This document shows positions 1,950 through 63,669 of a stretch of 64,000 bases of DNA, one piece after another. A program made the translations under genes and the position numbers. Positions within the stretch are counted from its first letter, which is position 1, and each line of letters starts with the position of its first letter. The notes under the pieces were generated by a model. It was not told the DNA's origin and did not search any database. It was given only the letters and a program-made list of their open reading frames with translations. Source of the stretch: Asterias rubens (lineage: Eukaryota); assembly GCF_902459465.1 (NCBI RefSeq), contig NC_047070.1, positions 11,160,001 to 11,224,000 on the forward strand, written 5' to 3'.

Positions 1950-1953
1950 TTAA

Positions 1954-24950: not shown

Positions 24951-26956
24951 TGCCCTGCATGCCAATCCATATCTTAACATGTTGACCTTGGTGGTCCAAA
25001 ACAATAGGCTTCTGGGGGAATCCAAGACCAATCCACACACCAAGTTTGGAGTTCATTTGTCACTCCTCCTTGACTTAAGCATTACATAGGAAGTGTAGAC
25101 CTGAGAACAAAAGAGATCCACACAAGACAGGGTTTTGACAAGGGATTGTGTGTATGTCGGAAATACATGCTCTTTGGTAGTGTCATCGGTATAAAAAATA
25201 TATGTAAATTTGCCGAGCAGAATTGCATGTCCAGAGACATGTAAACTTGAGTTCCATTTTGTTCTTTTCTGTGGTCATATGGGGATCATCATCAACGTCA
25301 AAGTAAAGAGGTCTTCCTGTACAGGGTCAAGAAATCTTAAGCGGTGGTTATAAACTGGAAGGAAGAAATCACAAACTTCATAGACACTTACATTGAACAA
25401 AATCATTAGTGAACAACTGAGGTTTAGGTATAGGCAGATCTTGAACATCAGGAATTAAATAAATGGAACAAATCATGCCCACAATAATAATTTCCAACAT
25501 CAATTAACAGCGTTTACAATCATATCTCAAAACCCAACACCAGTTTTTCCTGAGAAAGAAAATCTAAGGGATGTGCTCAGAGGGGGTTGCCCTCACCCCC
25601 ATCACTCTGACACACGTGTCCTGACCAACCCCCCAACCCCAAATTTGCAGGATCCACTCCTGGTTTTTATGCAAGACTCAATCCATTATGATTGCCTGCT
25701 TTCAAGTGCAACTGGGCCAACTTTCAAATATTAAAGTTACTTTCCATGCCAAATCTCAAATTTACTTAATATCAATGTATTATCAATGTGCAAAGGCATT
25801 TTGAATTTGTTTTTCCATGCTATAGCTATTTTATCTTGCCCCCCAACTGCAGTAAATATAAGCACTCTCTGACCTTTCAAGTGTTTTCAGAAAATAATTC
25901 ACTATCTATAGAGCAGATGTCTGAAACACTCGACCATTGAGTTCATCTAGTGATGAGAAGCCAACTCGAACAATTATAAACTCGAATCCTGTGTGGCAGC
26001 AGGAAACACAAACTTCTGCAGACCTCAAAAAGCAATGAGCACACAGTGCTTATAACTTAATGTCAGCACAGGGCAATACCATGTCAACACGGACAGGGGC
26101 CAACTTCATAGACATGCTGAGCAGACTAATCTGCTTAGAAATGAACAAATTTGCTAAGCAGAAACATGTTACATGTATCAGCAAAAAATGGTGACTGGTC
26201 CTCTGCTGATTTTCGCTTAGCCAGCTCATTGAAATTGGGCCCGTGTATTAAAAAAAAATGGGGGGGGGGGTAAGTACTGTAATTATTGTAACCTCTACAA
26301 ATTTTAAAAGAAAATGTTTTGCTACTTCCTCAGTTAAGTTTTGAATTAAGTCTATCAAAGTTACTGCTCATTTGTTTGTGTCCAGTCACTTTCGAAGAGG
26401 GCCATTGCAGTGGCCAGTGCAAAGACTTTACCACTGACATTGCCGTCTCTCTTCTTCACCCCAGTCTTTGACCCATCACTCGGATTTATTCCCATGAAGA
26501 ATCTGTGGGAGAAAAACATTAGAAGAATTATTTGACAAGTACGGTACATACTACTTTTGTTATTATCACTCATGCAATGACTACAATCTTTTCAAATTGT
26601 TTGTGGTGCCCTCTGGCTTTGCTCAGAAGACATCTGGTCTAGAATACAGAAAGTCGTGAGTTTGAATCCCAACTGATAAGGTAACCTGTGGATTGTTTTT
26701 TGGAGGTCACAGAGAGCAATGACATGTAGGGAAAAAATAAAAACAATACTCATTACCACAAATGCAATAAAGAAAAAACCCCAATAATATTCCATCTACA
26801 TGTAGGTGTCAAGATACATCAAACAGACTGCCCGGTCAAATAGCAGAGTGTTTAAAGCCCATCCTGCCAATCAAGTCAAAGGGCACCTTTAAATATTTCT
26901 GTTGGATAAAAATTTACCAACATTAATTGTTTACAATTAAATTATTTCAATGTTAA

Positions 26957-27341
26957 AGGCAGTGGACACTATTGGTAATTACTCAAAATAGTTATTAGCA
27001 TAAAACCTTTCTTGGTGACGAGTAATGGGGAGAGGTTGATGGTATAAAACATTGTGAGAAACGGCTCCCTCTATAGTGCCATAGTTTTCGAGAAAGAAGT
27101 AATTTTCCACAAATTTTATTTCGAGACCTCAAGTTTAGAACTTGAGGTCTCGAAATCAACTATCTAAACGCACACAACTTCGTGTGACAAGGGTGTTTTT
27201 TCTTTCATTATTATCTCGCAAGTTCGATGACCGATTTAGCTCAAATTTTCACAGGTTTGCTATTTTAGGCATATGTTGAGATACACTAACTGCAAACTGT
27301 GAAGGCTAGTCTTTGACAATTACCAATAGTGTCCACTGCCT
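26957..27341. mobile_element. MITE family A full copy (intronic in unit A)
   Basis: Perfect 24-bp TIRs, TTAA at 26953 and 27342. Confidence 0.9.
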
Positions 27342-27787
27342 TTAACAGGTTAAGACTGTTGCATTCCAGTCAAATTCAACTTACCTCTGAACAAAATCTA
27401 GGGTGCAGGATGCCTCCTTAGTGTAGTGAATGTTGAAAACATAGTAGGCTGCAAACATCGTGGTTAAAGCTTTGTCTGACTTCACCGAGTTGATGATATT
27501 GCCATCGATTGCAAGATAATGCTTAGCATTAGGCGAGTACATGTTTCCTACAACAAATTATATTAAATTTTCAGTATTCTACCTCAATTTTGAGAGGAAG
27601 GTAGATCATGAGTTTTTGGATGAAAACACTCAATCAAATGATCTAACTTTCAAAAAACAAATCATAAAACAAACCTGTGAAAATTTCATACGAATAGATA
27701 ACCATAATAAGCCTTTTGGATATTTGCATGCAATGGTTGTATTAAGTGGTGTTTGAAGCTTTGCATGGTGTTGAAAGTCAGAAGTAA

Positions 27788-28011
27788 CTATAAATAGTAG
27801 TAAACTTGCGGGTACAACCATGTGTAAAATTTCTTTTGGGAGGAGTGTTGGCTCTGAAACGAGCCGGTTTGGTCTTGACGTTTCCAACAGTATACTCTGC
27901 TTGTCTTCTCCTGAAGACGAGCAGAGTATACTGGCTCTTTTCAGAGCCAACACTCCTCCCAAAAGAGATTTTACACATGGTTTGTACCCGCAAGTTTACT
28001 ACTATTTATAG
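27788..28011. mobile_element. Foldback MITE with ~80-bp arms (intronic in unit A)
   Basis: ctataaatagtagtaaacttgcgggtacaaccatgtgtaaaatttcttttgggaggagtgttggctctgaaa is mirrored at 27938-28011. Confidence 0.85.
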
Positions 28012-28572
28012 GTATGTACTTCTTAATGGTTGTATTGTTCGCATGCTTGGAACAAATGATACAAAATACAAAATATACCACTAAGAAGTTGATATAAAAT
28101 TCCTTTTTTTTTTCATTTTGTATTTTAGTAAAATATTTCAGTGTTTGTATGATTCTGAAGTTTAAAGGGTTTTAGGGTCCACCCAAAAAACTTACCGATA
28201 ACTGCAATGCAGGGTGTAGAGGGAAGGTCACTGATGTCATTTCTTGTCACCATGTCCTACAAATGCATAAATGTTTATGACTAAAGTTAGTAAAAAAATC
28301 AACCCTCAGTAACCTGTTAAAACAACCAACAGCAAGGTTAGGAAGATTATTTGTACCAAACTTGGCTTTGAAATAATTTATCCACAACAAAATATTGACA
28401 AGCTAGTTGCCGAAGTTGAATTGTGCTTCACTGGTGTGAATGTTTCATGCGAATCTGCAATATTTACATTACAATTAGCTTTGCATTCTCATTCACGTGA
28501 AGTAAAGTACGACCCTGGCTTAAGTCTGGCAGGAGAACTCAAAAAATCTAGTATCATTATTCCTTTTGTTAA

Positions 28573-28938
28573 AGGCACTGTACACGTTTGGTAATTACTC
28601 AAAATATATATTAGCAAAAAAAGTTACTTGGTAACGAGCAACAGAGAGCTGTTGATAGTATAACACATTGGGAGAATCGACTCCCTCTTAAGTAACATAG
28701 TATTTGAGAAATAGGTAATTTCTCACTAAAATATTAAAAGACTTCAGCTGAAGCCTTTTATTTCTATCTGAAAGCAAACATATTTGTACAACAAGGGTGT
28801 TATTTATTTCATAATTTTCTTGCAACTGTGATGACCAATTGAGCCCAAATTTTCACAGGCTTGTTATTTTGTGCATATGTTGGGATACACCAAGTGAGAA
28901 TACTGGTCTTTGACAATTACCAAACGTGTCCAGTGCCT
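28573..28938. mobile_element. MITE family A-related copy (intronic in unit A)
   Basis: aggcactgtacacgtttggtaatt / aattaccaaacgtgtccagtgcct, TTAA on both sides. Confidence 0.85.
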
Positions 28939-30217
28939 TTAAGCAACTTCAAATGAGTTGAGTATACAATGTACACATGTACATGTACATGTACTGTACT
29001 TACATCATAGCAGCGGATGAGAACATATATATCTTCTTTAAAATATGCAGCTACATGTAGAAGACAGGGTAGACATTGGATAACTGCCAGCTTATTCTGT
29101 TGTTTGCTTACAGTGGTTTTGATCTGATGAACAACTTCTACCAATGATGCAGGGTTACTCTTGGTTTTGAGATATTCAAACAGCCTGGATGCCTTTGACA
29201 TAAGAGAATCATTTAGTAACTCTTGTAAGTCAATCCCTGTTAGGGAGTGGAAATGGTCTAAGAGCCATTTCTCCTCAGCAAGGAAAGGCCACTGCTTAAG
29301 AACATCCTCAACGCTCTTTCCATTGTTTATTTCAAAGCGTTGTGTGCTGTACGTGGCTTTCATGTTGTCATCCACGGTTTGTGTACACCATGGCAGTTTT
29401 TCATACTCATCCTTCAGCAGTTCCCTTTTCTGCTCTTGTGTGTCATGCGACTCCCCTTCCAGAAAATCTGGGTTGCCACTGACCCTTTACACATCCATAG
29501 CTGTTGAATTTTGTTTTCGATTTCTTATGCAATGATTCACTTTCATTAGAAGTTGAAGCTTGTTTATGGAGGCGATTAAGACCTGATTGCCTTTGGAGGT
29601 TTTCCGTTCTACTTTCTAACTGTTGCAGCAAAGTAGACGATCCATCGCCTATTGTCACACCATTGATAGTATCAGCGAAAGATTTGCTGAATTTTCGAAC
29701 AACTTGTTGTGCAACAATTCGCAGTTCTTTTCTCTTAGGGGTCACATGCACTCCGTTGATTTCATCCATAATTATTCTTATTGCTCTCCTGTCCTTTGGG
29801 TCAGGCTTTTGTCCTTTCTTGCAAGCTTCAATAAGTTTTGCAGGGAGTTTATGCCAAGGTACTTTGTACGTCTGTGACCAATCTGTTGATGAAGGCTTGG
29901 GTGAGTCATCTCTGGGGTAGTTGTCACTTGCAGGCTCTATCGCAGTTGATGTGCCTTGTTGTGACGAGGAAGGTCCTTGAGGTGTGCTGGTTTCATCAGG
30001 TTCATTGTTGGTGGCTGGCGCTGTTAACAGACCTCGCCTCCGGCTCGGTCCATTAACAGCGCCAGCCACCAACCCGGTCATTACCACGCAGTGAAGACCG
30101 CGTACTCGCACTGTTATTCCCTAATTAATAATTTTTAATTCTTACAGTTAGGCAAGGGACAAATCAGTTAACCCATCTGATATTGCTGTGTGCCACTACG
30201 TAGGCCTTATACTTTCA

Positions 30218-30590: not shown

Positions 30591-33500
30591 TTTTAAGGAG
30601 GCAACATTTCCTTGGTGCCCCTTGAAATATTTCAATAGCAATTTACAATTTCCTTATAAAGGTGCCTTTTACCTGAATCAAACATTTACAATATAACAAA
30701 AACTGGAAAGACCCAATGTCAAGTTGCACTTTATTTTCTCACCTACATGTATTATCAAAATATGGAGCTGCGTCACATCTCATCACTTACTCTTTAGGAT
30801 CTCTGGCTGGAGTCGATGACGCAACTGGGACAGGAAGTGTGTCATCACACTCAATTTCTGGTGTGGGACCTTTTGAAGAGTGTGACTTGGTTAACACGAT
30901 GCCGGAGTCATGAAGACGTCGCCTTCTTGTCACATCCTAATTGTTTTTAATCAATCCAAAAACATTTATTAATTTTATAACGCATACTAGTTGATCAGGT
31001 TTCATTAAAACAAAAAAAACAAAAAACAAATTATTAAAGGAAAAGACAGTGGCACCAGAGATTTTTCTGAAGGATAGTGTTAATTTCAACAGCCACACTC
31101 CAAAAATGCATCACAATTATTTAAACACTTTTTGGTTACACTCTTATCACAATTGTGTTGACTGGCAAACTTTCCAAACTTGTTTTCATACACATATATT
31201 TAGATTGTTTGTGACCTGTTCAAATTGCAGTGTACAGTGCTTATTAATTTGTTGTGTATCAAACAGTTATTTGGTGTATACTCATAACATTACAATGCTA
31301 CAAGACATGGTAACCATTTTATCATAAGGCAGCAGCAGTAGGGAACATGCAATGTGCACATTGTAATATTCTGTCAAGGGGATGGTCTGGTTTCTATGTA
31401 CTATGTTGCCAATGGTAAGTTACTATAAGGCGACTGGTCAGGCTTATGATACAGGTCTCCAGCATACTCCTTACACCTGAACTTTATGACATCAAGTTCT
31501 TTTAGCAATTTCACATCCTTGCTTTTGATGTTAGAGGTGTTTTGATAACATATGTTTGCTTCTGTAGATGTCACCCTTTGCTGACTTAGCTGAAAAAGTA
31601 ACTTGTGAAAAGTTTTCGTAAATGAATTGCAACCTGGTTACAAGAGAGGCCGTAAGCCTGCTTGGGGTTTCGTTTCTGCACAACATAATGTGGTTTGTGT
31701 TTTTAGCACCTTTGCATAAAGAGCGACAACAAGATGGTTGTTTAATTGGGAATTGTCAAAAAACCTTCATCACTATTTTTTTCAAAAGGCTTACAAATAG
31801 TGGTTTAAAGAATCTACTGAACAACAAATAATTATTTGTTACACATGTCATTCCCAAATATGTGTTATAAATGAAATGCACCATCTGCTGAAGACTTAAA
31901 AGAAACACTGATGAAAAAATACTTACCAATTTCGGATCGACAAAATCGTCATCTGAATCACTGTCCTGAAAAAAGGATGAGATATATATTATGAGATCTA
32001 AATACAGATGGGGATTTCAGACATCATCCAAAAGTGCGAAGAATTAAAAGTACAACCTCCATGAACATTTTGACGAACGATGTGATTATTCAGTTCCGTT
32101 TGCTGCATAATATGCAAATGCTTAAATAATTGAATTGATTTCCTGACAATGAGTTTTGCCGACCCATTACTTTTTATATTACAATGCATAAACTTGTGTC
32201 AACAGCACAGCAATATCACTGAAAAGGGAAAACATTTGGAAAACATCACTGGGACACAAATAGTACAGGAAAAAATGAAGTTTGTACCAACTGATAATGA
32301 ACAAATGCCGCAGAAAGGTGAAAGTGACATTTTTAAAAATTTTTTTAAAAGAGATTGTGGTTTGTATCTGTTAGCAAAGTGACAATGTGGATAACAAAGT
32401 TTCAATGTGGACATGGTGGATAACAAATTTACAATGTAGATAACATGTGTTGCATGATTTAAAATAAAAATGTTTTACTCACTGGAGGACTGACGATGTC
32501 CTTTGTCAGGAGATAGATTCTTTTTCTTTGGGTTTTGCAGTACTGACAATAGGTGCCCACTGTGAAATTACTTGGTCCATCCGGTAGTGTCAAGGTTGAC
32601 TTTATTGGGTCACCTACATAGTTCGCAAGAGATCTTTCGAGTTGCTTTAGCCTTTGTTTACCGTTTTTCCCATCTGGAAAAAACACTTCTTCTATTTTCT
32701 GTACACACTCGTCATAGTTGAGATTGGCTTCCATGTATAGATTCGTTGTCCCCCCACCCTTTACTGAGTATACTTGTTTGTACACCTTTTCAGACTTGTT
32801 ATAGTGCTTCCACCCAGCGCTTAAGCATAATTTGCTTGACTGCTGAAAATAATTAACACACAAAAGTCAAACATTAAAACCAGTTGTACAATTGTACGTG
32901 TGTCCGGAAAATCAATTTTGACAAAGCATCTTGTCAATCTTCTGAGGTTCTATTGGAACAGGCTGTCGTTATCACAGTTTGTATTTTTAGCCATGTGCAA
33001 ATGGTACAAATATGATCACAACAATTAAACAAGGTTATAAAACCTTCATTGAAGAAAAATTAGCGCTGGCGTCACACCAATCATCAAGTTGATACATATG
33101 TTGACTGTCGAACAGACAGGGACAAATGCAATCTTTACCACTAATATTAACAATATTGCAACTTTTAAGGGTTGGCTGACAACTGTGTGCTACTGTCTTT
33201 CAATTCAAAAATGTACATAAATGACTCTTCATCTTCAATGAATGTAAGTACAAATTTGTTGTACATCCTATTTCTTTTTTGACCCGCTGAATGGGCTACA
33301 TATACTTACGAGTACATTGCTTCGCGAACAGCTCGCTCCTTCGTTGATCTTGGACGACCTTTTCTTTTTATTATCTCCAATATGCTGTATCAGCTTTAAT
33401 ATCCCTTTAGGTGTCGCAGTATTATTACCTGCAGTTTAAAAATACAACATAGACAAATAACACTTAAGATCAACACAAAATGTGTTCAGTCCGATGTTAT

Positions 33501-44520: not shown

Positions 44521-44529
44521 ACACTTGGC

Positions 44530-50520: not shown

Positions 50521-50851
50521 AAACAACAACATAGATTTTGATTATTGTTAATGAGTATCATAGTACTTTTTGAAAAAGGTTTCCTGTGTAATTTCTTTTT
50601 TAAATATTCACAATCCACTGAAAAATGTGTGTTGTTAATGTATTGTTAGAGTATTTTTTTTTTTTTAAGTGAACACGTACCTTTAGTGGTTCATCGCATC
50701 AATTTGATCCATACAAATCTCAAGACCAACCCTTTTTTTCAAGTTAATACAACTTTTACTTATTCAAAAGACAAGAACACATAATGCTTAAAACTCGGTA
50801 AGAGCATTACTGATAAGTGATTACCAGGGATCACATACAGGCTAAATTGTT

Positions 50852-53800
50852 TCACTTGGTTAGTTTGTCAAGCAGTGCACAAACACTTGGATGAACCTTT
50901 TCCTTGTCTTGTATGTTCAGGACAGGTCTCTGGAAGAACTGCATAGTTTTCTTCAAGGATTTGGGATAAGATAAATTGAAAACATAAAAACAGGCAAAAT
51001 AAACTTCAAAAGCAGAGAGCAAGTGCTTGGTTTCCAATATAGACTCCTCTTCCAGCATGACTGTGTATACGATGTCATCCTCTTCACGTTGGTGAATGAA
51101 GAGGTTCATTTGTGAGTTACCCTGAAAATGGAAGGAAAAAAAGGAATATAAATACGGGAGATAAAAGAATGAAATAATTGTGGATGAGATTTGATGGACG
51201 TAAACAAATCCTGTTGGCATGGGTTTCCCCTCATTCTAGACCTGGAACCTCCCAAATGATACAATTCAGGAGGTTTACAGACTCTGTGCATTACCAGAAA
51301 TACAAAACTACGGGATGGACACAATATGGACTATTTTTGTTTTTACTTTTGATGACTGTTTTATTTCTTTCAAGAACATTTGAATGATCAAGGATTTAAG
51401 GAGAAAATCCTGAAATCCGGAAAAGTGACATGCCTGAAATATAAAAGGCACAATGGCACCATGGCTGAGAACTTTTAAATCATCTTACCTGTTCAGTCAG
51501 TAGCTGATCTAGCTTCTCCTTGAGTAGTATCAGTACCACAGCGATTGAAGCGCAATATGCTTTGCCTGCAATAGAGTGATACTATTGTTATAGTTCAATA
51601 TTTCTGAACTTCTTTGACTATAGCTGAAACATACTAAACCGAGGTACATTTTTCAATATTAGACATGTTTTTATTATACATTAGATCAAAAAGGGGTACC
51701 AATCTTTTGAAAGAACAGTTCCCTGGTAAACTATTTTTATGGTTATTAATATTGCAATTTATTCACATTATTGTGGCTGCCCAAGAAAAGTCTTAAAAGG
51801 AAACAAATTTAACATTATATTCTTTGTGCAAGGAATGCAAATTTGAAAGTGGGACTGCCTTGTTTTAAAGAAACTGAACTAATTTTGAACAAAAAACATG
51901 TCAATCCAGATTTATTGATAGCACTCACTGGAACCGACAGCAAGGCAATGGGGGTGATCATGAAAGCACAGTGATTCCATAAGGCCTTGTGGTTCAATTT
52001 GATAGAAGACCCATGCTGCACAAAAACATAAAATAATTATTTACCCTGACGGTTTTCTTCCGCTGTTTCCGCTAGTGATGCCAATTCCACCAGCTTCTTC
52101 ATGGCAACATGATCTTGCTTCTTGGCCAGAGTATAGAGCTGTTCATGGTACTTTTCCAAACCAGTTTCCAGCTTCCTCCCCAGGTCTTCTGTTGCTATGC
52201 GTTTGAACTCTTTCAAGACCTGTAGGCCCTATACCAGATAAACATGAATACCAGTTGCACATATAAGCAATAAAGATTGAAAGTTGGCTGTCATATTATT
52301 GTACATGTTTCAGATAGCTATGAAGCACCAACCGAAAGAGCATCATTGTTTGGCCTTGACAAACACTTTCAAATTTGTCCCTCGATCGGCCACCATACAC
52401 ACATACAAAAAGAGAGCTTGCCTGACATACAAAAATGAATCAAGCAGCAGCCATCTATCCACTAGCAAATAATAGGTTGCATGCATTTTTCCAGGAATAC
52501 AAAAATGGGTTTGAGTTAATCGATTTTGTAATTAGTCAATACAGTATGCATTGTACAAGTGATAATATGAATCGCAATTTCAATGTGTTTTCAAAGAAAC
52601 ATACCTCGTTTCCACTTGCTAGAAGTACCGGGAAAACTTCTTTGATATCTGCCACCAAAGGACTCTGTTTCACAATAAACTCTCTGTGATCAGCAAATGT
52701 CAGATCCATGAAACGATCAAGTCGGTTTTGGTCAGGTTTCCTCTTGGACAGTTCATCCCTCATTGCAGCTTGATGCCTTTTAATTGATATATCGTCTTCA
52801 CCCTCTGGTCGTTGACTGAGATAGTTTTTAAGACCCCACATCAGCTTGCCGCTCATCTTTGGAGGTGGTCCGCCTGTAGTTGGATCTGAAAGTCGGCGCT
52901 TTCCTGGCACACAATTTGTATCCCTTCGTCTTCTGTCATTTTGAAATCGATATTGAATTCTTTGACGCCACAGATTCTGTGAACAAGCAACATTTAAATA
53001 AGTCTTACTTATCTCAAGGTAAAATAAACATTTGTGGCAAGTTTCATGAAAATCGATCATAAACTTTGGAAAATACCGAGGGGGCACTATGTGCTGACCC
53101 CGGTCCCTGTACGACCAAAAATAGCCCGGACCTGATAGGGTTGAGCCATCTGACCCCTGAATATCCCCTTTCAAAACCCTGCAATTTCTTACCATTGACA
53201 AATTGCCATTTGACACAACTTTGGGAAACTTCTCCAGGAATGCTGAGACTACTTCTGTGTACTGCCATTCTTTCGGATAACTGGGTAACAGGAAAACACA
53301 ATGTCAATAAGTTATTACACTATGGATAGATTATTCACCAATCAATTGCTGTGTTCTCTTTCCCTCCAACTCCCCTCTGCTTACACCTGCCACATTCCCT
53401 TTTGTGTGTAGAATAGTTGCAAAAACAAACAATTTGGAACCTCTGACACAAAACATTTGAGAAATTCCCCCCATATCTCTTTTCTGGGTGTGGGCAGGAG
53501 AGTCATGTACAGATTAGCTTTTTGTTTTTAAATTTCATTAAGCAAAACCAAAGTTTGAGCTTTCTAGTTTGAAAAATAACACATCCACTATAGAGTGGTT
53601 ACAGTTTGTACCCCTAAGCTTGGAATATTTCAACAACAGCAGTTTTACAACATCTCTTGCAGTTTTGATGAGAGAATGAGATATATAGGCATAAAGCTAA
53701 TAATTTTTAGGTATTTTTGAACAACAGTAAACTGTAGATCAGGGTACTGAGTGAGGTTGGATCAGTATGACTATGGAACAAAGATTCTTCCGTCTTCAAG

Positions 53801-54853
53801 GGCTGCGTATGTTCTTGAGAGAAGCTTAACTTGCTAGCAAAACAAACTCTGAACTTACTATGTATACTTCGTGACTTCTTGGTAGATGGCATCTGTGACC
53901 TGTCTCCTCTGTTGAGCTGTTCACCACTTTGCAGCTTCTGCAGTACTCCAGCCCGCAGAGCATATACTGGGAATTTAAACTTGATTGGCCAAACACGGAA
54001 ATCCCTGGTTGTTGTTGCCGTGCATAAAGTAGATCTTTTAAAAGAAAACACAAATTTTAAATTAGGCAATTCAACTTCATTTACTTGATTATTTGTTTTG
54101 AGGAGTACAGAAATATATCATGTGTTAAGTGCTTTCCCGATTTGTCCTTTCAAATATTAATCCACAGACGGTTTTTGTTATTCCATTTGCTAGGGGTGGA
54201 TTACCAAGTGTTGGAAAATTCAAGTGAATAAATTGTAAGGTTGTCAAAATCACTTTTAAATTCTGACTTAAGCACAATGCCATAAATTTAGCAATTTGGG
54301 CATTTAAAAACCACCCCTCCCTCATAAAATGTTCAAGGTTGGACGGGCATCAGTTGAGAGGGGGCATGCCCCCCCCTGTGCCCCCCTTAGTTACGGCACT
54401 GTTGCTAAGTTGCGCCCATTAATATACAATTGTCTGCTGAAACTTGGTCCACAGTGTGATGTCAAGTGATCATCAGTTCTCATGTTCAATAAAATTTCAC
54501 ATTATAACTCATGGTATAACTAGCATTGTTTTTAAGCATCAAAAGACAACTCACCCTTCATCATCTTTGTCTGTTTCAATGCTGCTGGAAGGTGAAGACA
54601 GTGCAGCAGGCGAGTCATCTTTGTCAGAATCATCAGCTTCAGTCAAAACTTGTAATCTCATCATGCTTTCCAGAATTGATGTTGGATCAACATTAACCCA
54701 ATCAGCAAAGTCTTTATCAAAGTACTGAAGTAGCATTGGCTTCCTATCCCTTGGTATGTTGGATTTGTTATGTATGGCCTCAATTACCTCATCCATATTT
54801 CCCTTTTCAGTTGCAGAACTCAATGATCTGCTTCGAACTCGTATGTGTGACAT
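50852..54853 (-). pseudogene. SAMD3-like CACTA-accessory gene with a PB1-like N-terminus (unit F). Exons 54853-54555, 54035-53859, ~53282-53195, ~52977-52606, ~52220-52046, ~51563-51490, ~51121-50852
   Basis: LLQYFDKDFADWVNVD...LQVL; AIYQEVTKYT|.YPKEWQYTEVV..FLEKFP; WRQRIQYRFQNDRR; MDLTFADHREFI...IKEVFPVL; AFEVYFACFYVFNLSYPKSLKKTMQFFQR. One apparent frameshift at ~53890. Confidence 0.75.
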
Positions 54854-54976
54854 GGAATTTAAGACGCGTTTTCTGAAAACATAAGTTTTTACAATACTAT
54901 CAATACTATGTAATGATGATCATATACCACAGCTACTTTTTCCAGTTAATACAGGTATTGACTTTGGTGGATGCAT

Positions 54977-57456
54977 TTATACAGATATCTTGTGTCTAAG
55001 AATTACTAATTTGTTATCACTGTTGGTGGGAAAGTCATACACATCAAGTGGATGGTAGTCAATATCATCCGTAGGTTTAATCAAGATATACCTATGTAGT
55101 GGTGTCACTACATATGCATGGTAATGGATACTAAAGTGTAAGGTTAAAGGTATGTACACAAAAGGTATGGAATGTTGCCAATGAGAAAGCAGTCCTCAAT
55201 CATGAGAAACACGGGAAAACTGTGACTGTATTTCAAAATCACACATGAGCCACAGCAGTATTTGACCCCATTGACCTTAATGCAGTTACTCTCAAAAACT
55301 CGCTCTTGACCACCTAAATGTGGTCGCAATAGTTCTTGAACTTCCTTCAACAACAGCCTGACTAGACTGAGTTTTCCACAAAGTGTGTCGATATGCTGTG
55401 CTTCCAAGTATTTATCTGATGCTAAAAATATTGTTTGCATGAACTGGTGTCTGAAGGCCATACTTTTACAGATGTTCTTTCTGTTTTTCAATCCATGAGT
55501 TATTTCTTTGAAGTAGTTGTGTTTGCCTTCAAACCTGAGTGTCCAACAGTGGATAAGTGGGCCAAATTGCAGAATTTGCCAAGGATAATGCAATGTGTAG
55601 TGGCCTTTGGGTTTCATATTTACATCAGGAAATTCCCTTTTGTACATGTACATGAAATCCTCTATAAGATCTGAAAGAAAGCTCACATCACTTTGTGAAC
55701 AAACTGGTGCACATGATGCTTCCACCATGAACAGGAGGGCCAACAAAACATCCCACTTATTGTCGGCCTCAGGAATTGTGTCACCAACCAAAAGTGGGAA
55801 CAGCCTCAATAAGCACCAACACTGCATTGCTGTTTGCTTCACCCGAAAGTCAGCCACTGTTGATGCCATCCTAGTTGGCTTATTTGACCTGTCAAATTTA
55901 CCATAAGGAAAGCTGTCAATCCTGGTGTTCAAAAACTGGAGAGTGAAGTAACCTTCAGACACACAGTGCAAAACCAGATTCTTAAGCACTTCAGGCACAA
56001 GCCCTTCAAACAGATCATGGGCAATGTCTGAAGGAAGGCCTCTGGTAACATGAAAATACTCTAGCTTATTAAGAGGAGAATCATTTTTCACGCCATATGT
56101 TGTCTTCAATCCTTCATCTTCAGCAACCATTGTAACTTGTGCATTGTAACTTTCCATTGTTCTCATTTCACAGCTGCTGGTCGTCAGACAATCATTAGGG
56201 TCTGTTCTTGTGACCATACAGAAACGACTGACCCTTAAGCCACTGAAACTTTCGTTGAATCCTCCTACTGAATGAGCACCAAGATTGTCTGCTGAAACAA
56301 ATGACACTGAGCCTCTAAACTGATACTGATGACCATTCCTGTTCACACTAACACCTTCTCTTTCTAAAAGTGAAAGATCTCCAAGTAAAGGTTCCAGGAC
56401 TTTCTTTAAACCATACTTTTTCAAGTGTTTTGATTTGCACAGAAGAGCAAGCTGTATGACATACAACTTTGATCTGTATTGTGGTGACAAGTTTCCAAGC
56501 ACAAAATAAAATGCTGCAAGTTTGTAATTCTTAACCTTGTTTCCAAGTGGATTTACAATATTGAAATCATCATAATATAATTGGACCTGTAAACTTGGGC
56601 ATTCAGAAGAAAATAATACATTTCCACTGTATACAGCACCATCACAAAAGTCTCTCAATTTACCATCCTCAGACTTGTGTCCCTGCATTACCTCTGCTAA
56701 TACATCCTCATGTTGCAAAAGCAACTCAAGTGTTTTCAATATGGGTATGTACTGTGTAGACGCACATTTGCCTTGAGCGTCTACTCCAAGAACAAATTCT
56801 ACTGGTTCATTGTAAGGAAACTCAGACTGAATGTAACGACTCAATTGTCTGTTATCTTCCAAGCTGTGAAATATGTCTTCCAATTCTGTTGACCGAATAA
56901 CAGTCATGGCAGTTGCAATCTCATCCTGGTTTACAGCATCTTCAAGTAGAGCTGATTTCAACTCAGACAATTCCTTTGCTTTAAACATCTGCAAAATATT
57001 TACAAGCTCGGACGCAACAAAACTACAAACAGTTCCTGGTACTTTGTGTATTTCTCTTAAATTCAGAAAAAACAGAGCTGCCTTCTTCTTTACATCTATT
57101 ATTCCAATTGGTACGTTTTCTACTGCAGCTTCGATGTTCACAAGTTCTGGACCCTGCAAACCCACCTGCTGCTCAGCCTCCTCAGGTGCTTCTATATCAT
57201 TCAGATCTAGCCCAAGTTCAATTGCATTTAAGAAATGCATGCGGTAAAAATCCTTGTGAACAATTTTTATATGTTTGATGAAGCATCAGACTGTAGAAAG
57301 ATTCTTATGACACCCATTTATATCACAATTTATCTTAAATCTGCCATTGCCAATTTCATGTACGAACCGATAATGGTTTAAGACTCTTTTGAAATGAGGT
57401 GTTTCATATTCACAGTGAACACAGACAAAAACTCTGTTGTTGTAATCCTCTTCCAT
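54977..57456 (-). pseudogene. CACTA/EnSpm (CMC) transposase with an N-terminal C2H2 zinc finger (unit G), nearly intact
   Basis: ATG at 57456 (MEEDY..CVHC...HYRFVH...CDINGC). An in-frame TGA at 57286-57288 reads through into the 698-aa ORF: QLYYDDFNIVNPLG, FYFVLGNL...RS...IQLALL, SADNLGAHSVGGF, DIAHDLFEG, KPKGHYTLHY...GPL...WTLRFEGKHNYFK. A frameshift at ~55150 leads into the terminal HYHAYVV...DYHPL..Y...LRHKI. Confidence 0.88.
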
Positions 57457-57460
57457 GATA

Positions 57461-57830
57461 CCCTTACACAAATTTGCACAAGCTTGCTGGCAAGCTTGTA
57501 ATAAGCTTACCGGCAAGCTTGCAGCAAGCTTACCACAAGCTTGCCAGCAAGCTAGTAACTAGCTTGTATTGTTCCAAATATTTAAATTAGGGCAAGCTTG
57601 CAACAAGCTTGCGGCAAGCTTGTTACAAGCTTGCCAAAATTTGAGATGGTTTACATCGTACAAGCCAGTTACGAGCTTGCTGCAAGCTTGCGGTAAGCTC
57701 GCCGACAAGCTTGCTCTAATTCCAACATTTGGAACAATATAAGCTAGTTACCAGCTTGCTGCAAGCTTGCGACTAGTGACCAGTTTGCAGCAAGCTTGCG
57801 ACTAGTGACCAGTTTGCAGCAAGCTTGCCA
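57461..57830. repeat. Foldback array of caagcttg palindromes beginning CCC, immediately upstream of the unit G start codon
   Basis: More than 15 (c)aagctt(g) motifs; inverted arms gcaagctagtaactagcttgtattgttccaaat (~57548) / atttggaacaatataagctagttaccagcttgc (~57727). Confidence 0.8.
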
Positions 57831-58421
57831 TAAATTTAAATATTTAGAATACAAGCTACGCCATGATTGAAGAAAGCATGCGCTGCAGACGTTTTTTTTT
57901 AGCCGGCAACTTTTAAATCATGCAAAGGCATTGCATATACAGACGCTTGTAAATTCAATTGAACTCAAAGAAATTGGAAAAGTTGAAAGATTGCAAACAT
58001 TTCACCATCGATAAATTTAGTAGTTAACTTGTATTTACTTAAGTATAGTTCAGGCCAAAATTAAGGAGAATGTTATAGTCAAATAATTCACACTGCACTA
58101 GCTTGTTAACAGCAACAAATGAGTAGTTTTATTATTTTTGGTTGTTTCTTTCCCTGTACATGTAAATAAAAATAACAAATATGAGATATTTTATGGTGCA
58201 CACAATGCAGGAGCCTCTTATGCGCATGTACAGTGTTTACGATATTTATAAACCCTTGACGTATATAAATCCTGAGACAGAGGTGTTTGCCTTTTCAGAA
58301 AATAATGAAGTAAAGTCAAATAAATTAATAAAACAATTATTTACCTCTGCAAGACTTGCATGAAGGAATTGGGATGGTGAAATGCAGTTGTGACAACCAA
58401 AATCAGCTGTTGCATTTTTAA

Positions 58422-58650
58422 AGGCACTGTACACTATTGGTAATCACTGTTAGCATAAAAACTTACTTAAAGGCAGTGGACACTATTGGTAAATACTCAA
58501 AATAATTATTAGCATAAAACCTTACTTGGTAATGAGTAATGGGGAGAGGTTGATAATAAAAATCATTGTGAGAAACGGCTCCCTCTGAAGTAAGATAGTT
58601 TTCGAGAAAGAAGTAATTTTCCACTAAAATATATGAATTAATTTCAAGAC
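58422..58650. mobile_element. Two nested 5' halves of MITE family A
   Basis: TTAA-aggcactgtacactattgg at 58418 and TTAA-aggcagtggacactattgg at 58467; both lack 3' ends. Confidence 0.75.
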
Positions 58651-59344
58651 CTCACGCATGAGGTCACAAAAGCAGAATTGACAGTTGGAAGGGTCTCTAT
58701 ACTACTGGTAAAGCACAAAACAGAAAAACAGATGGGGGCCTAAAGTGAGGAGTTTTTCCTGTGAAGGGATCTTCGGGTTGTTGCACATTTCTGATTAATC
58801 TTATCATTGAATTCCTTGGACGTCATGCACGGTTGTCCATTAGGTAACTTGAACTTGCGAAGTACACACTCTAGAAAACAATTGGCAAGAGAAGTTTGTG
58901 TTTAGTCAATGTGTAAATATAAAAGGTTATGGTACAGCTATCATCATGGCCCCATAACGGTTAAAGTGTACTCGGTGCTCTATGGGGCTGCAGAAGACAA
59001 CATTCAAAAGGTACTCAAATCCAAGACATTCTCCATTAAGAACAGATGTCTTATATCATAACGCTGATGTAAATTTTTCGTCATTACTTTGGATACAAAA
59101 AGGTAAATGCAGTTCTTTATTTTATTGTAAATAACTTTCATAGTAAGCTGAAAATTTCAAGTTTGGCTTCACCATTACTCTTGTAAAGAAATGATGCATT
59201 CACTTAATTAAAAAACTGTGCTTGTATTCTTCAAAACATAAACCGTTCTCAAATACATTCAAATGTTGAATGGAACCTTCCAGGAAATAGTTACAGATAT
59301 GATACAGGATTGGTAATGATAACAAACATCTGAAAGCTTTGTTT

Positions 59345-62300
59345 TTAAGGTGATATGAAATCTGTCATCTTCAATAAGAATGTAACTGAAGACCTCAAAA
59401 TAAATATACTGATTTTAATATGCAACGTTGAAGCAATGCATGAATATGAATTGGCACAAAGCAACTGATAAAATATAAACAGTTTGTTCTGTGTTTTTTT
59501 TCTCAAAACCTTGAAGAAATGTTTCTGTGTAATCTGAAAACTATCAGATTGAAAGAACACATTCTTTAAACAATTTTTTTTTATCATACCTGTAAAGTAT
59601 GACTTAAAAAATAAAGTTGCAGGCATATCTTGGAATAATTTCATTTCATTCTCTGTGAACTCCAACAAATAAAAAAAGAAACAAAAATTACCTTTAATTT
59701 CTTGTAATTTCTGTGCATCCAGGGGCACGTTAGCAGATTCACTCTTGCGATTAACCGCCTGCCTGGAGCCACAGGCATTGCCTCGGGCAAGGCAACTCTC
59801 TCCAAAGACAGCTAGTAGCAAAGCAGATAGCAATGACTCCTTGGAGGTGCCTTTTGAGAAAGCAACCCTTTTGTCCTGCTCCTTCAATAGTGGTAATCCT
59901 CCAGAATACAGTGGGATTAAGATCTGTGAAATAAAATAATAAAGTCTCTATGTTAGCAAGGATGTGTTTATTGACAGTGTCTTGTCCAGAAGCCACCTGT
60001 TCACAGTGGATGGGTAAAGCAAAATTTTGGCCAGACTTGTATGGGTGCCTCTTTGGCCCCAAAACCATCTTATCATTATTGTATTTACTTTCGCAAGGAA
60101 AATGTGGATAGACACTTTGTCAATCCTAAACAAGACACTGTTTCTCAATCTCTTAACATTAAAACAATTCTAGTGAGGAAAACTTTTTGCAAAATTTCCT
60201 TTTCAATAAAGGCACTGTAAGCAAGTGTGTAGAATTGTGATCTTCATAGGCTATTTGGGATAGAGATTGTACACAAGGGATGTTTGCACATAGTAATACA
60301 GCACAGGCTGGTTTGGGACCAGGGAAAAAAACATGTTTTAATCGGGACCTTGTAATTTTCGAGCTTGTACTACTAACAAGAGTCCGCTATAGTCAATTAC
60401 CTCATCTGATGTTGGGGTCATGGAAGACTCTTCATTAGGGATGTCTTGGCGGATTGGTTTTGGCAGGATGGCTTCATAGGTGACTTTGGCAGGTGGAGGT
60501 GGGTTTGGCAGGATGGCTTCATAGGTAACTTTGGCAGGTGGAGGTGGGTTTGGCAGGATGGCTTCATAGGTGACTTTGGCAGGTGGAGGTGGATTTGGTT
60601 TTGGCAGGATGGTGACTTTGGCAGGTGGAGGTGGGTTTGGCAGGATGGCTTCATAGGTGACTTTGGCAGGTGGAGGTGGATTTGGTTTTGGCAGGATGGT
60701 GACTTTGGCAGGTGGAGGTGGGTTTGGTTTTGGCAGCTGGCTTGTGGAATGGCAGGACTGTAGCACTGATGTAAACTCTTGCATGAGTTTAATCTTTTTG
60801 GGGGTGATAGCTAATAAAAAAAACCACTAACGATATTACTCATTTTACAACCATAGAATTACCACTGTAAAAATGTAACTAAATGGAAACGACATTGCCT
60901 TAATTTTGGCACATTACATATTTGGTGATGTATTTTCTCCTTATGTTTTTCCTCCCTTGAGGAGATGAGCAAGTTTATTAAGTCAAACCTTTAAAAAATC
61001 CTGACGGGCTGTGGATTTGGTTATTATTTTTGGTACAAAGTGAACCTACCGGATGTTCTAATTTAACAATGGTGAGGGGGTTAAGGTTTAAATCCTTAAA
61101 GATGCTATGTCAGATTTTTGCCCCAAACATTAAAAAATAGTTTTTTTTGAGTGAATGGTATTTCAAGATGTATCACCCGCTCTAACAAAAAAGTTTAACT
61201 TTTACTTTTAATGGTCAGGAACCATGACAAAAATTTAAAACGTTTCTTTTAAAACACATAAGAATTGGTCACGTGATATATTGTCGGGATCCCGACAAAA
61301 ACTAATTTTGAGCACTTTATTTCACTGCTACTAATAATTGGCGGACTTTTACGAGCAATGGCTCAAGCTTGTAACTTTCCCGACCCCCATCAAATTACAT
61401 ATTGAATTTTAAATCAAAATTTTTGGGTCAAATCGGCCAAAAATTTGACATAGCATCTTTAATCACAGGCCTATAAAGCAGACTTTCAGTTTTATTTCAA
61501 GGAAATGTCTATCTTACCAACACTGAAGGGAAGGCCTGTTGCAGACTTTTGACTCAGCTGCATGATTTCTTCATTTTTCTTCTTCACCTCATCATGCAGC
61601 TGTCTGATTTGGTTGTCCCTTTCTGCCAGCTGCTCTTTCAGTTTTGAAATGACTCTGTCCTCCATGCTCTGATGACCATGTTTAACTTCAGCATCTGGTG
61701 GCTTCATACAGAGAGAAAAAACATCAACAGTATGAATATAGGTTTTCTTGATATCGATATGTTGTACTTCAACAGAGACAAACAATTGCCTGGGATCAAG
61801 GATGGTCCGGGGGGTGGGGGGGGGGGGGGGAGAGAGGGGGGCGGAAGGGGTCCCGCCACCAACGCGCCACCTACGTTGAAAATAATCTCATTCGGCTCTC
61901 GTGACTTGGACCGGTCGAAGCTTTACGTACAATACCTATTGTGCAAACGCCGAGCATAATACACGTACATTTCCTATGTACAGTATGGTAAAGATTTGAA
62001 TACACAGTTGCTACCCGCTGCACGCTGGCGGCTGTTAGCTGCCTGGACGGGTCCATTTTATCAGAGGGAGTTGTTATCTCTAAATGTAAATTCACCAAAT
62101 CTTTACACTAGAGAACATCGTAAATGTTTTTTGTGTGTTGCCAACTGCTTCAGTAATTTAATAATTTAATACACAACATATATTTGACCAGTATGAACAT
62201 AGAATCTTTGTGTGGGGTGTTGTATAGGGCCTACTTTGTACTTAACCATCTTGACAACAAAGCAAATTGTTGGATTTTTGTTTATTGTCCAGAAACAAAT

Positions 62301-63669
62301 GCTCAGTTAAATGTTGATGCCTACCTTTACAGTGAACATTTCTCTACACAAAGCTTGCTGCACGTTTAATTTGTCTGCAGTGGCCTTGAGCTTCTCGCCT
62401 TTGCTGATGCTAGTCTTTACACCCACTGCTGACTTTGGTTTAGCAATCTTGCTGGTCTTTGACTTTGGTTGTTGCTCTTGACTGTCTTGACTAGTGACGA
62501 AATCTGGCATCAAAGATTGTTTGCGGCTGCGTTTGGTGCTGCTGGTTGATTGAACATCTGTGGTGTCATGCCTATCCCCAGGCCCAGCAAACTCTTCCAT
62601 CGAGAGCAGCAGTCTCGCTTGCTCATCCTGGAGCTCTTTCTTACTCTCTGTGAAGTTTAATTCAACAAACGTATGGATGTAGGGATGACTATTATTACAA
62701 CAAAATCTATAACAAAGGAGGAATATGCTCGAGTAAATCAGTCTGGTTCCCATAGTCAATCGTAACAGTTGATAGTTTATGTTCTTAAGTTGTTGAAGAA
62801 ACCAAACCCAATAATGATAATGCGTCTTAGAGTTTGACATATCAAGAATACAGTAGGTGATTTTTGAGATTATGTTTGGTCTTTTTGTCATTTTGAGGCA
62901 TTTTTTGTGGCTGGGTGTCACGAAAAAAGGAAGGCATCGTGAGGAGCGACTGCGTCCGACTGGGGCGCTAGTCATGCTATAGACCCGTAAACGTGGCCAA
63001 ACATACTCCGTTCCTCCGTCATTTGGCCACGGACCTATACACGGTGACATGTTTCGACATTGAACGAAAAAAAAACAGGCGTTTTTTCCCCCTAATTTTG
63101 TCCCATCCGTAAAATTTCTAACACAAATGTTGCCATTCAAATCTGTTATTCTAATGCCATGGAAGTGCCCTTTGATTTGAAACATACAAATGCCCTTTTT
63201 ACCCAAGACAAAATGGCCTTGCCCCTCTAGTGACGAAATTTGAGGCCTGAAATTTGTCTTTGTTCAACCCAAAATCATTTAAAATTTCATTGTACCCTGT
63301 CATGCTTGTTGTACCTCCATGTTGTGACTTTTGGTTTATTATTTGATGAGCCCCCCCCCCCCCCTATATAAACCAAACAACCGACTGACATGACTGAATA
63401 TCCACTCATGACTTACCACTGATTTTGATGAGTTTCCCGGGATATTTCTTGCCGTCTTTAAACCGTATTTCAGAGACGGTACCCTCCTTTCTTAGGTCTG
63501 TGCGAACGCTGACGATGTTTTCTATGCTAACTTGCTTATCGTTGATCCAGTAAACCAAACACCACGTTTTGGATTTTGACGATGGTGCTTTTGCTTCGAA
63601 GGGATTAGACCGAGGCTCCAGCCCAAACAACTCTTTCACAACAATGCTAGAGCGACTAGCGTGTGCCAT
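59345..63669 (-). CDS. BEN-domain protein (unit H). Exons 63669-63417, 62647-62325, 61701-61518, 60810-60401, 60125-59997, 59923-59692 and probably 59588-59345; one in-frame TGA at 60122-60120
   Basis: All junctions are GT-AG with consistent phases. N-terminal WCLVYWIND...SEIRFKDGKKYPGKLIKIS (SH3/Tudor-like), a coiled coil (ISKLKEQLAERDNQIRQL), a Pro-rich repeat, then BEN-like SLLSALLLAVFGESCLARGNACG...PLDAQKLQEIK. Confidence 0.7.
60440..60740 (-). repeat. Coding tandem repeat PKPNPPPPAKVT(YEA)IL, about 6-7 units of 36-45 bp, in unit H exon 4
   Basis: Repeats of ggtgactttggcaggtggaggtgg on the plus strand; all length variants are multiples of 3. Confidence 0.9.
61100..61458. mobile_element. 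Fourth TTAA MITE family (intronic in unit H)
   Basis: TIR agatgctatgtcagatttt / aaatttgacatagcatct; TTAA at 61096 and 61459. Confidence 0.85.

What the first reader, a model, noticed from the sequence alone, without database searches (positions are those of the whole stretch)
26361..63669. 37-kb stack of nine intron-containing transposon gene units, all on the minus strand
Seen: every recognisable coding unit from 26.4 to 63.7 kb is on the minus strand. They comprise three unrelated DDE transposases (CACTA/EnSpm, hAT-like, RAG1/Transib/Chapaev-like), three SAMD3-like genes, and BEN, Tudor-knot and G2E3-like units. Inference, three options: (a) nested insertions of about 5 separate large elements; (b) one giant composite element whose ends lie at ~24 kb and beyond 64 kb; (c) a transposon trap transcribed from the plus strand so that all cargo is antisense, as in uni-strand piRNA clusters. 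With about 5 independent modules, chance co-orientation is 1 in 16, so the bias is suggestive only.
Basis: partly seen in the sequence, partly recalled or inferred. Interest (0 to 1): 0.75.

Follow-up and report, generated by a model that had tools for sequence, protein, structure and literature searches.

The report
Same-strand pile-up of sea-star transposons
Downstream of the UBLCP1 gene of a sea-star-like genome lies an old pile-up of about six separately acquired DNA-transposon modules that all point the same way, which is real but ordinary and within what chance allows (about 1 in 32).

Summary
Every coding unit I could recognise between 26.4 and 63.7 kb is on the minus strand, and plus-strand ORFs are antisense shadows, repeats or have no family hit. 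The three transposases are real and unrelated:
- CACTA/Plavaka type, 54980-57441
- hAT type with a Hermes-like fold and a Spindlin-like tail, 46522-50245
- Transib/RAG1 type, 36905-38526

"Nine intron-containing units" is overstated.
- The three transposases are single-exon.
- The frame breaks in the Transib-type gene are frameshifts.
- The one in the hAT gene is missing from read-derived contigs, which leaves 1253 open codons.

The units collapse into about six independent modules. Transposase plus a PB1/"SAMD3-like" gene is one two-gene CACTA element, with two roughly 10.5-kb copies in Patiria miniata. A chromo-barrel gene plus the Transib-type transposase is another, also found in Patiria. 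Neighbouring modules do not travel with them. The part laid with reads (45.3-51.3 kb) has even, single-copy-like depth in its own species.

Nested or adjacent independent insertions (option a) are supported. One giant element (option b) is not. The piRNA-trap idea (option c) stays untested. Unchecked scan notes report the same two-gene elements elsewhere in this genome.

The parts
58743..63675 (-). BEN-domain-like multi-exon gene with a proline-rich 45/87-bp repeat exon at 60455-60727. It is a separate module, not part of the conserved CACTA unit.
   Evidence: Minus-strand ORFs. Pfam BEN E 0.003, below cut-off, covering half the domain. No match in the Patiria loci L001 and L005 that carry the CACTA unit.
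50616..58235 (-). Candidate extent of a two-gene CACTA/EnSpm-type element. The 3' end at 50616 reads CACTGAAAA. The 5' end at 58235 is only a guess.
   Evidence: The Patiria copies L005 and L001 end in TTTTCAGTG, and the same 9-mer ends the window copy at 50616. In organisms C and D the contig match breaks between 50574 and 50703 and depth steps up about ten-fold. No matching target-site duplication was found.
57478..57828 (.). Cluster of 14 GCAAGCTTGC-type palindromic motifs just upstream of the CACTA transposase, likely subterminal repeats.
   Evidence: 17 matches in the whole window against 1.9 expected, 14 of them here. Tandem arrays found here as well.
54980..57441 (-). CACTA/Plavaka-type transposase, a single exon of about 820 codons. 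It has an in-frame stop at 57286-57288 in the zinc-finger part and a frameshift near 55144-55152.
   Evidence: Atlas neighbours carry Transposase_21 or Plavaka. 83 homologues, best 58-74% identity, two of them carrying PF02992. tblastn and translation.
50855..54878 (-). PB1 domain plus a conserved C-terminal region, six exon blocks. Frame breaks near 54818 and 53900.
   Evidence: Collinear conserved blocks in Patiria L001 and L005. P0281 is named a PB1-domain protein; Pfam PB1 E 1e-3. The continuous 363-aa ORF of Logan contig L006 maps to separate blocks. Stop-free GT-AG joins exist for the four junctions tried.
46522..50245 (-). hAT-type transposase with an N-terminal coiled coil and a Spindlin-like C-terminus. 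Two ORFs (726 + 531 aa) in the window, one open frame of 1253 codons in read-derived contigs. The element reaches at least 46043-50574.
   Evidence: Homologues of 1000-1240 aa in echinoderms. AlphaFold model pLDDT 74.6; the best 11 PDB matches are Hermes, E 9e-4. Family profile hits Spindlin-4, E 2e-4. X1 and X3 contigs lack one base at 48151. ORF check.
46289..46460 (.). High-copy miniature inverted-repeat element (MITE) inserted just 3' of the hAT transposase stop codon.
   Evidence: Inverted arms 46291-46316 and 46435-46460. Summed word depth up to about 30000 against about 162 beside it, with many loose ends at 46289 and 46460.
44618..45387 (-). SAMD3-like #2: a relic holding only the 5' exons. 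The C-terminal YYVFN-type exon is missing.
   Evidence: 29% identical to unit #1 over 100 aa, E 4e-10. Weak hit by P0283. Motif scan finds the C-terminal exon only in #1 and #3.
38916..39544 (-). Chromo-barrel (Tudor-knot-like) gene, the upstream partner of the Transib-type transposase.
   Evidence: Pfam Tudor-knot E 0.02 and MSL3 chromo-like E 0.09, both below cut-off. Conserved with the same position and order in Patiria L004, 8623-9278.
36905..38526 (-). Transib/RAG1-type transposase. Dead copy with at least 3 frameshifts, cut off after about residue 560 of about 740, so the part with the catalytic E is missing.
   Evidence: 488 relatives found with one exon as query. Abutting tblastn segments in four frames. 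Family profile hits RAG1 and RAG1L, E 2.5e-6. Patiria L004.
21717..21797 (-). Possible continuation of the Transib-type transposase (FY.GEINYRNF.G.EHR). If real, 21.8-36.9 kb is a 15-kb block inserted into that gene.
   Evidence: tblastn with four family members hits here at the residues that directly follow the break, E 0.04-0.2. DNA alignment to Patiria L004 scores z of about 2.8. Not found by the family HMM. Weak.
32462..32866 (-). Identity unverified. It may be an upstream exon of SAMD3-like #1.
   Evidence: No Pfam hit. No similarity to the PB1 protein or to ORF 42228-42620.
26364..30120 (-). SAMD3-like #1: a multi-exon paralogue of the CACTA second gene without a transposase. Two MITEs sit in its introns at 26945-27345 and 28561-28943.
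   Evidence: P0283 hits 29459-29013 (E 3e-5) and 27470-27384. C-terminal YYVFN motif at 27446. Repeats.
3091..15390 (+). UBLCP1 exons, the host gene, on the opposite strand and convergent with the stack.
   Evidence: Motif scans of plus-strand frames find KWNGKEY at 3091, [10 protein letters not shown] at 7474, PYLHEFL at 9159 and IMFDD...NGLK at 15273. The motifs came from memory, so treat this as a lead.

Best explanation
The tract is an old, non-mobile pile-up of about six separately acquired DNA-transposon modules, partly nested, in the gene-poor stretch downstream of UBLCP1. It is inherited vertically.

In minus-strand order the modules are:
1. a BEN-like gene
2. a two-gene CACTA element (transposase plus PB1/'SAMD3-like' gene)
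3. a hAT-type element whose 1253-codon transposase frame is open in read-derived contigs
4. a 5' relic of a second SAMD3-like gene
5. a dead two-gene Transib-type element (chromo-barrel gene plus RAG1-like transposase)
6. a block with the 'G2E3-like' ORF and a third SAMD3-like gene, possibly inserted into module 5

The shared orientation is real. It shrinks from nine units to six independent events, because genes of one element are co-oriented by construction. It then needs no mechanism beyond chance (about 1/32).

Shown here: the identities of the three transposases, the two-gene units, the separate occurrence of units in other species, and the even depth of the laid part. Inferred: the module count, the element ends, and that orientation is chance.
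For: - All coding units are on the minus strand.
- CACTA transposase plus second gene are collinear with two Patiria miniata loci. Those loci share a roughly 10.5-kb element at 93-98% identity with CACTG...CAGTG ends. Neither contains BEN or hAT sequence.
- Chromo-barrel gene plus Transib-type transposase are conserved as a pair inside a p450 intron of Patiria.
- The hAT transposase stands alone in Lytechinus pictus, 3.5 kb from an RNA polymerase gene, and in Anneissia.
- Contigs of organism A have nearly equal word depth (141-203) across SAMD3-like #2, the hAT element and the CACTA 3' exon. MITE contigs there sum to thousands.
- In organisms C and D (2-7% diverged), contigs join 46091 to 50031 and 46087 to 49960, so a form without the transposase exists. 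The match breaks between 50574 and 50703 and depth steps up about ten-fold there.
- Decay states differ between modules: open frame, near-intact, truncated.
Against: - Six of six in one orientation is still only 3% by chance.
- The module count rests partly on inference. BEN, SAMD3-like #1 and #2, and the G2E3-like ORF have no defined ends.
- No terminal repeats or target-site duplications were established for any element in the window.
- Logan word depth is not a true copy number, and only 6 kb of the 37 kb was laid.
- The contigs of organisms C and D may come from paralogous copies rather than the same locus.
- Transcription and small RNAs were not examined at all.
Confidence: 0.7

Rival explanations
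1. Uni-strand piRNA-type trap. A plus-strand precursor, for example UBLCP1 read-through or its own promoter, runs through the tract. Insertions whose genes lie antisense to it are silenced and kept.
For: Uniform minus orientation. UBLCP1 is on the plus strand directly upstream. Sea stars make TE-derived 29-30-nt 5'-U piRNAs even in soma (PMC6085071).
Against: No transcript or small-RNA evidence of any kind. No RNA run holds the CACTA second gene. The cargo is a few large, nearly whole elements, one with an open 1253-codon frame, not the many short fragments typical of flamenco-like clusters. The orientation statistic is weak.
Confidence: 0.1
2. Orientation-selective retention without piRNAs. 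The tract lies in a plus-strand transcription unit, either a long 3' extension or an intron of an unseen host gene. Transposon genes in sense orientation, with their own splice and polyadenylation signals, were purged.
For: A plus-strand host gene lies immediately upstream. Antisense bias of transposons inside transcription units is a well-known pattern (general knowledge). An unchecked scan note (s1-170827) places another CACTA element about 67 kb beyond the window end, so transposon-rich sequence may continue.
Against: No plus-strand exon was recognised in 26-64 kb. The end of UBLCP1 was not mapped. No RNA data.
Confidence: 0.1
3. Partly a host gene cluster. The SAMD3-like, BEN-like and G2E3-like units are tandem host paralogues, co-oriented by duplication, and only the three transposase elements inserted among them.
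For: The three SAMD3-like units are paralogues on one strand. Units #1 and #2 have no transposase beside them.
Against: Unit #3 moves together with the CACTA transposase in two Patiria copies. The paralogues are only about 25-29% identical, so they are not recent tandem duplicates. Unit #2 is a truncated relic.
Confidence: 0.07
4. One giant composite transposon, with ends near 21-24 kb and beyond 64 kb, that carries all the units as cargo.
For: Uniform orientation. A possible Transib fragment at 21.7 kb extends the transposon tract leftwards.
Against: No terminal inverted repeats. The laid part has even, single-copy-like depth in its own species. There is a depth step and a sequence break between the hAT and CACTA modules in related organisms. 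The modules occur separately in Patiria, Lytechinus and Anneissia.
Confidence: 0.03

Closest known systems
Nested or clustered transposon insertions ('TE nests', graveyards) in gene-poor DNA
   Same: Several unrelated elements of different ages lie side by side or inside one another. MITEs sit inside them. There is no sign of joint mobility.
   Different: All gene-bearing modules share one strand. Several are large, nearly complete multi-gene DNA transposons rather than fragments.
Uni-strand piRNA clusters such as Drosophila flamenco
   Same: Transposon cargo is uniformly oriented, next to and antisense to a possible upstream transcription source.
   Different: The defining transcript and small RNAs were not examined. 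The cargo is few, long and partly intact. No such cluster was found described for echinoderms in the papers searched.
Maize En/Spm (CACTA) architecture with two products, TnpA and TnpD
   Same: A Transposase_21/Plavaka-type transposase plus a second multi-exon gene in one element. CACT-type ends in the Patiria copies. Subterminal short repeats.
   Different: Here the second gene follows the transposase instead of enclosing it. It encodes a PB1-domain protein unrelated to TnpA. A 3-bp target duplication was not seen.
RAG-like (ProtoRAG) and Transib transposons
   Same: The RAG1-like core is recognised by profile. A partner gene sits beside the transposase.
   Different: The partner is a small chromo-barrel protein in tandem orientation, not a convergent RAG2-like gene. 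The copy in the window is dead and truncated.

Membership tests
Uni-strand piRNA cluster | Transposon content predominantly in one orientation | tested here: met
   All recognisable coding units are on the minus strand, but that is only about six independent modules.
Uni-strand piRNA cluster | Long single-stranded precursor transcript antisense to the cargo | not testable with these tools
   No RNA run holds the region.
Uni-strand piRNA cluster | Dense 24-31-nt 5'-U small RNAs from one strand | not testable with these tools
   Small RNAs are shorter than the 31-letter index words. Suitable libraries exist for Asterias rubens (PMC6085071).
Giant composite transposon | Further copies with the same internal order and junctions | tested here: not met
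   Even, single-copy-like contig depth over 45.3-51.3 kb in its own species. Break and depth step at about 50.6-50.7 kb in related organisms. Modules occur separately in other echinoderms.
Giant composite transposon | Terminal inverted repeats bounding the whole | tested here: inconclusive
   None found within the window. One end would lie beyond 64 kb.
CACTA/EnSpm (CMC) transposon | Transposase_21/Plavaka-type DDE transposase | tested here: met
   Atlas neighbours. Homologues P0010 and P0038 carry PF02992. The window ORF itself has no Pfam hit.
CACTA/EnSpm (CMC) transposon | CACT(A/G)...(C/T)AGTG termini | tested here: met
   The 3' end of the Patiria element...TTTTCAGTG, is fixed where copies L005 and L001 diverge. 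Its 5' CACTG end is read in L001 only. The window has CACTGAAAA at 50616. Its other end is not fixed.
CACTA/EnSpm (CMC) transposon | 2-3-bp target-site duplication | tested here: inconclusive
   Flanks of the candidate ends do not match in the window or in Patiria L001.
hAT transposon | Hermes-like transposase fold | tested here: met
   Model of relative P0084 (residues 330-1037), pLDDT 74.6. The best 11 PDB matches are Hermes (E 9e-4, prob 1.0, TM 0.27/0.38). P element follows at E 0.36.
hAT transposon | hAT dimerisation domain by sequence (PF05699) | tested here: not met
   No Pfam hit in the window ORFs or in P0092 and P0084. The profile does not reach Hermes in the PDB. Atlas gives only weak hints, 0.61-0.66.
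hAT transposon | Short terminal inverted repeats and 8-bp target duplication | tested here: inconclusive
   No convincing pair found in 45.3-51.0 kb.
Transib/RAG1-like transposase | Sequence relationship to the RAG1 catalytic core | tested here: met
   Profile A1 hits zebrafish and mouse RAG1 and amphioxus RAG1L in two collinear stretches, E 2.5e-6. Member P0175 gives Pfam RAG1 E 2.7e-4, below cut-off.
Transib/RAG1-like transposase | Complete D-D-E triad | tested here: not met
   The window copy stops at 36905, before the E-bearing region. Only a possible 25-residue continuation lies at 21.7 kb.
SAMD3-like proteins | Homology to vertebrate SAMD3 (SAM domain plus C-terminal region) | tested here: inconclusive
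   No SAM domain found. The relatives retrieved are named PB1-domain or uncharacterised. The structure model was too poor to compare, pLDDT 40.

The most novel reading that the evidence does not exclude
The tract is a uni-strand piRNA-producing transposon trap of a sea star, fed by plus-strand transcription running on from UBLCP1. All captured transposon genes would then be read antisense. I found no such cluster described for an echinoderm in the papers searched.
Probability: 0.07. Interest if true: 0.6.

Novelty: new member of a known kind. Interest (0 to 1): 0.25.

Why it matters
As a stack it matters little. It is a transposon nest whose shared orientation is compatible with chance.

Its value is as a catalogue. 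It holds, side by side:
- a two-gene animal CACTA element with a PB1/"SAMD3-like" partner
- a two-gene Transib/RAG1-type element with a chromo-barrel partner
- a hAT-type transposase fused to a Spindlin-like reader, whose frame is open in reads at single-copy-like depth

Each of these is the subject of its own finding in this scan.

If small-RNA mapping showed strand-specific piRNAs here, the tract would become a candidate uni-strand cluster in an echinoderm.

Tried and rejected
- Pfam on 40-odd ORFs gave almost nothing above cut-off.
- Single exons of the Transib-type gene found nothing in the PDB. Only the family profile did.
- The hAT family profile did not reach Hermes by sequence. The fold search did.
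- The structure of the PB1/SAMD3-like protein P0283 was too poor to use, pLDDT 40, so SAMD3 likeness stays untested.
- A search for terminal repeats of the hAT element and for the CACTA 5' end led nowhere.
- The GCAAGCTTGC repeat is absent from Patiria.
- Several ENA contigs had no DNA to read.
- An exact-product look-up of the 698-aa ORF found nothing.
- A findings search by sequence was blank.
- Rfam found nothing.
- The three-gene cassette idea (BEN + transposase + SAMD3-like) was rejected, because the Patiria element has no BEN gene.
- The idea that each transposase carries its own SAMD3-like gene was rejected, because the hAT relatives lack one.
Full report
**What the window is.** The best named relatives of its transposon proteins are from Patiria miniata and other echinoderms. 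The window is therefore most likely from a sea star. UBLCP1 exons lie on the plus strand between about 3.1 and 15.4 kb (motif scans; the motifs came from memory, so this is a lead). The flagged tract is downstream of UBLCP1 and convergent with it.

**Checking the observation.** In 26-64 kb, stop-free stretches of 150 aa or more split 12 minus to 4 plus. In 1-26 kb the split is 1 to 2. All long plus-strand ORFs lie in tandem repeats or are antisense to long minus-strand genes. The few independent ones have no Pfam hit. So the statement that every recognisable coding unit is on the minus strand holds.

**The CACTA module.**
- The 698-aa ORF at 55144-57240 sits among clusters carrying Transposase_21 or Plavaka. 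It has 83 homologues, mostly echinoderm, two of them with PF02992.
- Homologues align from 57441 to 54980 in one exon. The alignment is interrupted by a stop at 57286-57288 and a frameshift near 55144-55152.
- Directly downstream, six conserved blocks (54878 to 50855) are collinear with two Patiria loci, L001 and L005.
- They encode a PB1-domain protein, P0281.
- A Logan contig (L006) carries the same protein as one continuous 363-aa ORF, so the blocks in the window are exons. Stop-free GT-AG joins exist for the four junctions tried.
- The two Patiria loci share a roughly 10.5-kb element at 93-98% identity. Its 3' end...TTTTCAGTG, is fixed where the two copies diverge. A 5' CACTG end is seen in L001. 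This is a mobile two-gene element.
- It contains no BEN gene and no hAT sequence.
- In the window the same 9-mer end occurs at 50616. A cluster of 14 GCAAGCTTGC motifs lies upstream of the transposase. The 5' end and the target duplication were not found.

**The hAT module.**
- Two ORFs of 726 and 531 aa align end to end with echinoderm proteins of 1000-1240 aa. There is one frame change at 48153-48158.
- Contigs of two sequencing runs (X1 and X3, organisms A and B, sequence essentially identical to the window) lack one base at 48151. With that observed variant the frame is open for 1253 codons, against 739 in the window. The frameshift is therefore an assembly error or an allele.
- An AlphaFold model of the core of relative P0084 (residues 330-1037; pLDDT 74.6) has Hermes transposase as its best 11 PDB matches.
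- The family profile reaches Spindlin proteins at the C-terminus, E 2e-4.
- In Lytechinus pictus and Anneissia only the transposase is shared with the window, with no neighbouring module.

**The Transib-type module.**
- One 104-aa exon found 488 relatives.
- A profile of 18 full-length members hits RAG1 and amphioxus RAG1L in two collinear stretches, E 2.5e-6.
- In the window the protein aligns from 38526 to 36905 in four abutting frames. These are frameshifts, not introns. The alignment stops at about residue 560 of about 740.
- In Patiria locus L004, inside a p450 intron, the upstream chromo-barrel gene and the transposase are conserved in the same order. This is a second two-gene element.
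- A short stretch at 21717-21797 (minus strand) resembles the residues that directly follow the break. The family HMM does not detect it.
- If it is real, 21.8-36.9 kb is a 15-kb block inserted into this gene. I give that about 60%.

**The remaining units.**
- SAMD3-like #1 (30120-26364) and #2 (45387-44618) are distant paralogues of the CACTA second gene.
- Unit #2 lacks its C-terminal exon. Neither has a transposase beside it.
- The BEN hit is sub-threshold.
- The 'G2E3-like' ORF has no verifiable identity.
- I could not test likeness to vertebrate SAMD3.

**Reads.** Contigs of four runs were laid on 45300-51299.
- In organism A the contigs over SAMD3-like #2, the hAT element and the last CACTA exon have word depths of 141-203. 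A MITE at 46289-46460 sums to about 30000. This fits one copy of each module, with the tool's warning that word depth is not a copy number.
- In organisms C and D (2-7% different), contigs join 46091 to 50031 and 46087 to 49960. A form lacking 3.9 kb of the transposase therefore exists.
- The right breakpoints lie inside the coding start, so this is an internal deletion and not an empty site.
- Organism C still holds a piece at 46828-47181, so a fuller copy elsewhere is not excluded.
- In both organisms the match breaks between 50574 and 50703 and depth rises about ten-fold. This fits a CACTA end at 50616 and different copy numbers of the two neighbouring modules.
- No RNA run holds the CACTA second gene.

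**Interpretation.** Nine units become about six independent events:
1. BEN-like gene
2. CACTA pair
3. hAT element
4. SAMD3-like #2 relic
5. Chromo-barrel/Transib pair
6. The block with the 'G2E3-like' ORF and SAMD3-like #1

Six of six on one strand has probability 1/32 (either strand). That is unremarkable for a feature picked out of a scan of many windows.
- Option (a) is supported, as set out above.
- Option (b) is disfavoured by the missing terminal repeats, by the even depth of the laid part in its own species and the break between two modules in related organisms, and by the modules turning up separately in other echinoderms.
- Option (c) remains open but has no positive evidence. Sea stars do make transposon-derived piRNAs, and libraries exist to test it (PMC6085071).
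- A related, plainer rival is selection against sense-oriented transposon genes inside a plus-strand transcription unit.

**Earlier scan notes.** Unchecked notes report the same two-gene CACTA and Transib elements and the Spindlin-tailed transposase elsewhere in this genome. My Patiria comparisons agree with the two-gene readings. They disagree with the three-gene cassette that includes BEN.

**Verdict.** This is a real but ordinary transposon nest. Interest is low as a stack. Its component elements are the interesting part.

Noticed in passing
window 46522-50285 (variant at 48150-48151): Read-derived contigs of two runs lack one base present in the window. That leaves the hAT/Spindlin transposase frame open for 1253 codons, at the same word depth as its flanks. 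It may be an active or co-opted gene. Related organisms C and D carry a form with 3.9 kb of it deleted.
   Followed up: partly
window 46289-46460: A 172-bp MITE with 26-nt inverted ends. Its summed word depth is up to about 180 times that of the flanks in all four runs. It is inserted just 3' of the hAT transposase stop codon.
   Followed up: partly
window 1552-1950, 7830-8230 (inverted), 16286-16685, 26945-27345, 28561-28943, 36617-36690, 58459-58628: A family of roughly 400-bp elements with TTAAAGGCAGTGGACACTATTGGTAAT-type inverted ends (MITE-like). All four copies inside the stack share one orientation.
   Followed up: no
window 21717-21797 (-): A short stretch reads like the residues that follow the break of the Transib-type transposase at 36905. 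It hints that 15 kb (21.8-36.9 kb) was inserted into that gene.
   Followed up: partly
window 35446-36100: A 42-bp tandem array of about 12 copies at 89% identity, which creates long spurious ORFs on both strands.
   Followed up: no
window 43686-44414: An AT-rich satellite with nested periods of 31, 126, 162 and 288 bp, just 3' (downstream on the minus strand) of the remaining exons of the SAMD3-like #2 relic, in what would be its intron.
   Followed up: no
L006 (Logan SRR27871394 contig, 221-1312): A continuous 363-aa ORF homologous to the CACTA second gene. Its parts map to separate exon blocks in the window. It looks like a spliced transcript or an intronless copy in another species.
   Followed up: partly
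L005 6506-17023 and L001 8818-19274 (Patiria miniata): Two copies of a roughly 10.5-kb two-gene CACTA element at 93-98% identity, with tandem arrays near the 3' end (L005 16462-16926).
   Followed up: partly
window 16692-16778 (-): A tRNA-Leu(CAA)-like sequence next to a repeat copy in a UBLCP1 intron. Related pieces lie at 8882-8932 and 9700-9763. It is possibly the head of a tRNA-derived SINE.
   Followed up: no
window 46476 and 48151: Two one-base indel differences between the window and read-derived contigs within the 6 kb laid. Single frameshifts elsewhere in this assembly should therefore not be taken as real without reads.
   Followed up: partly
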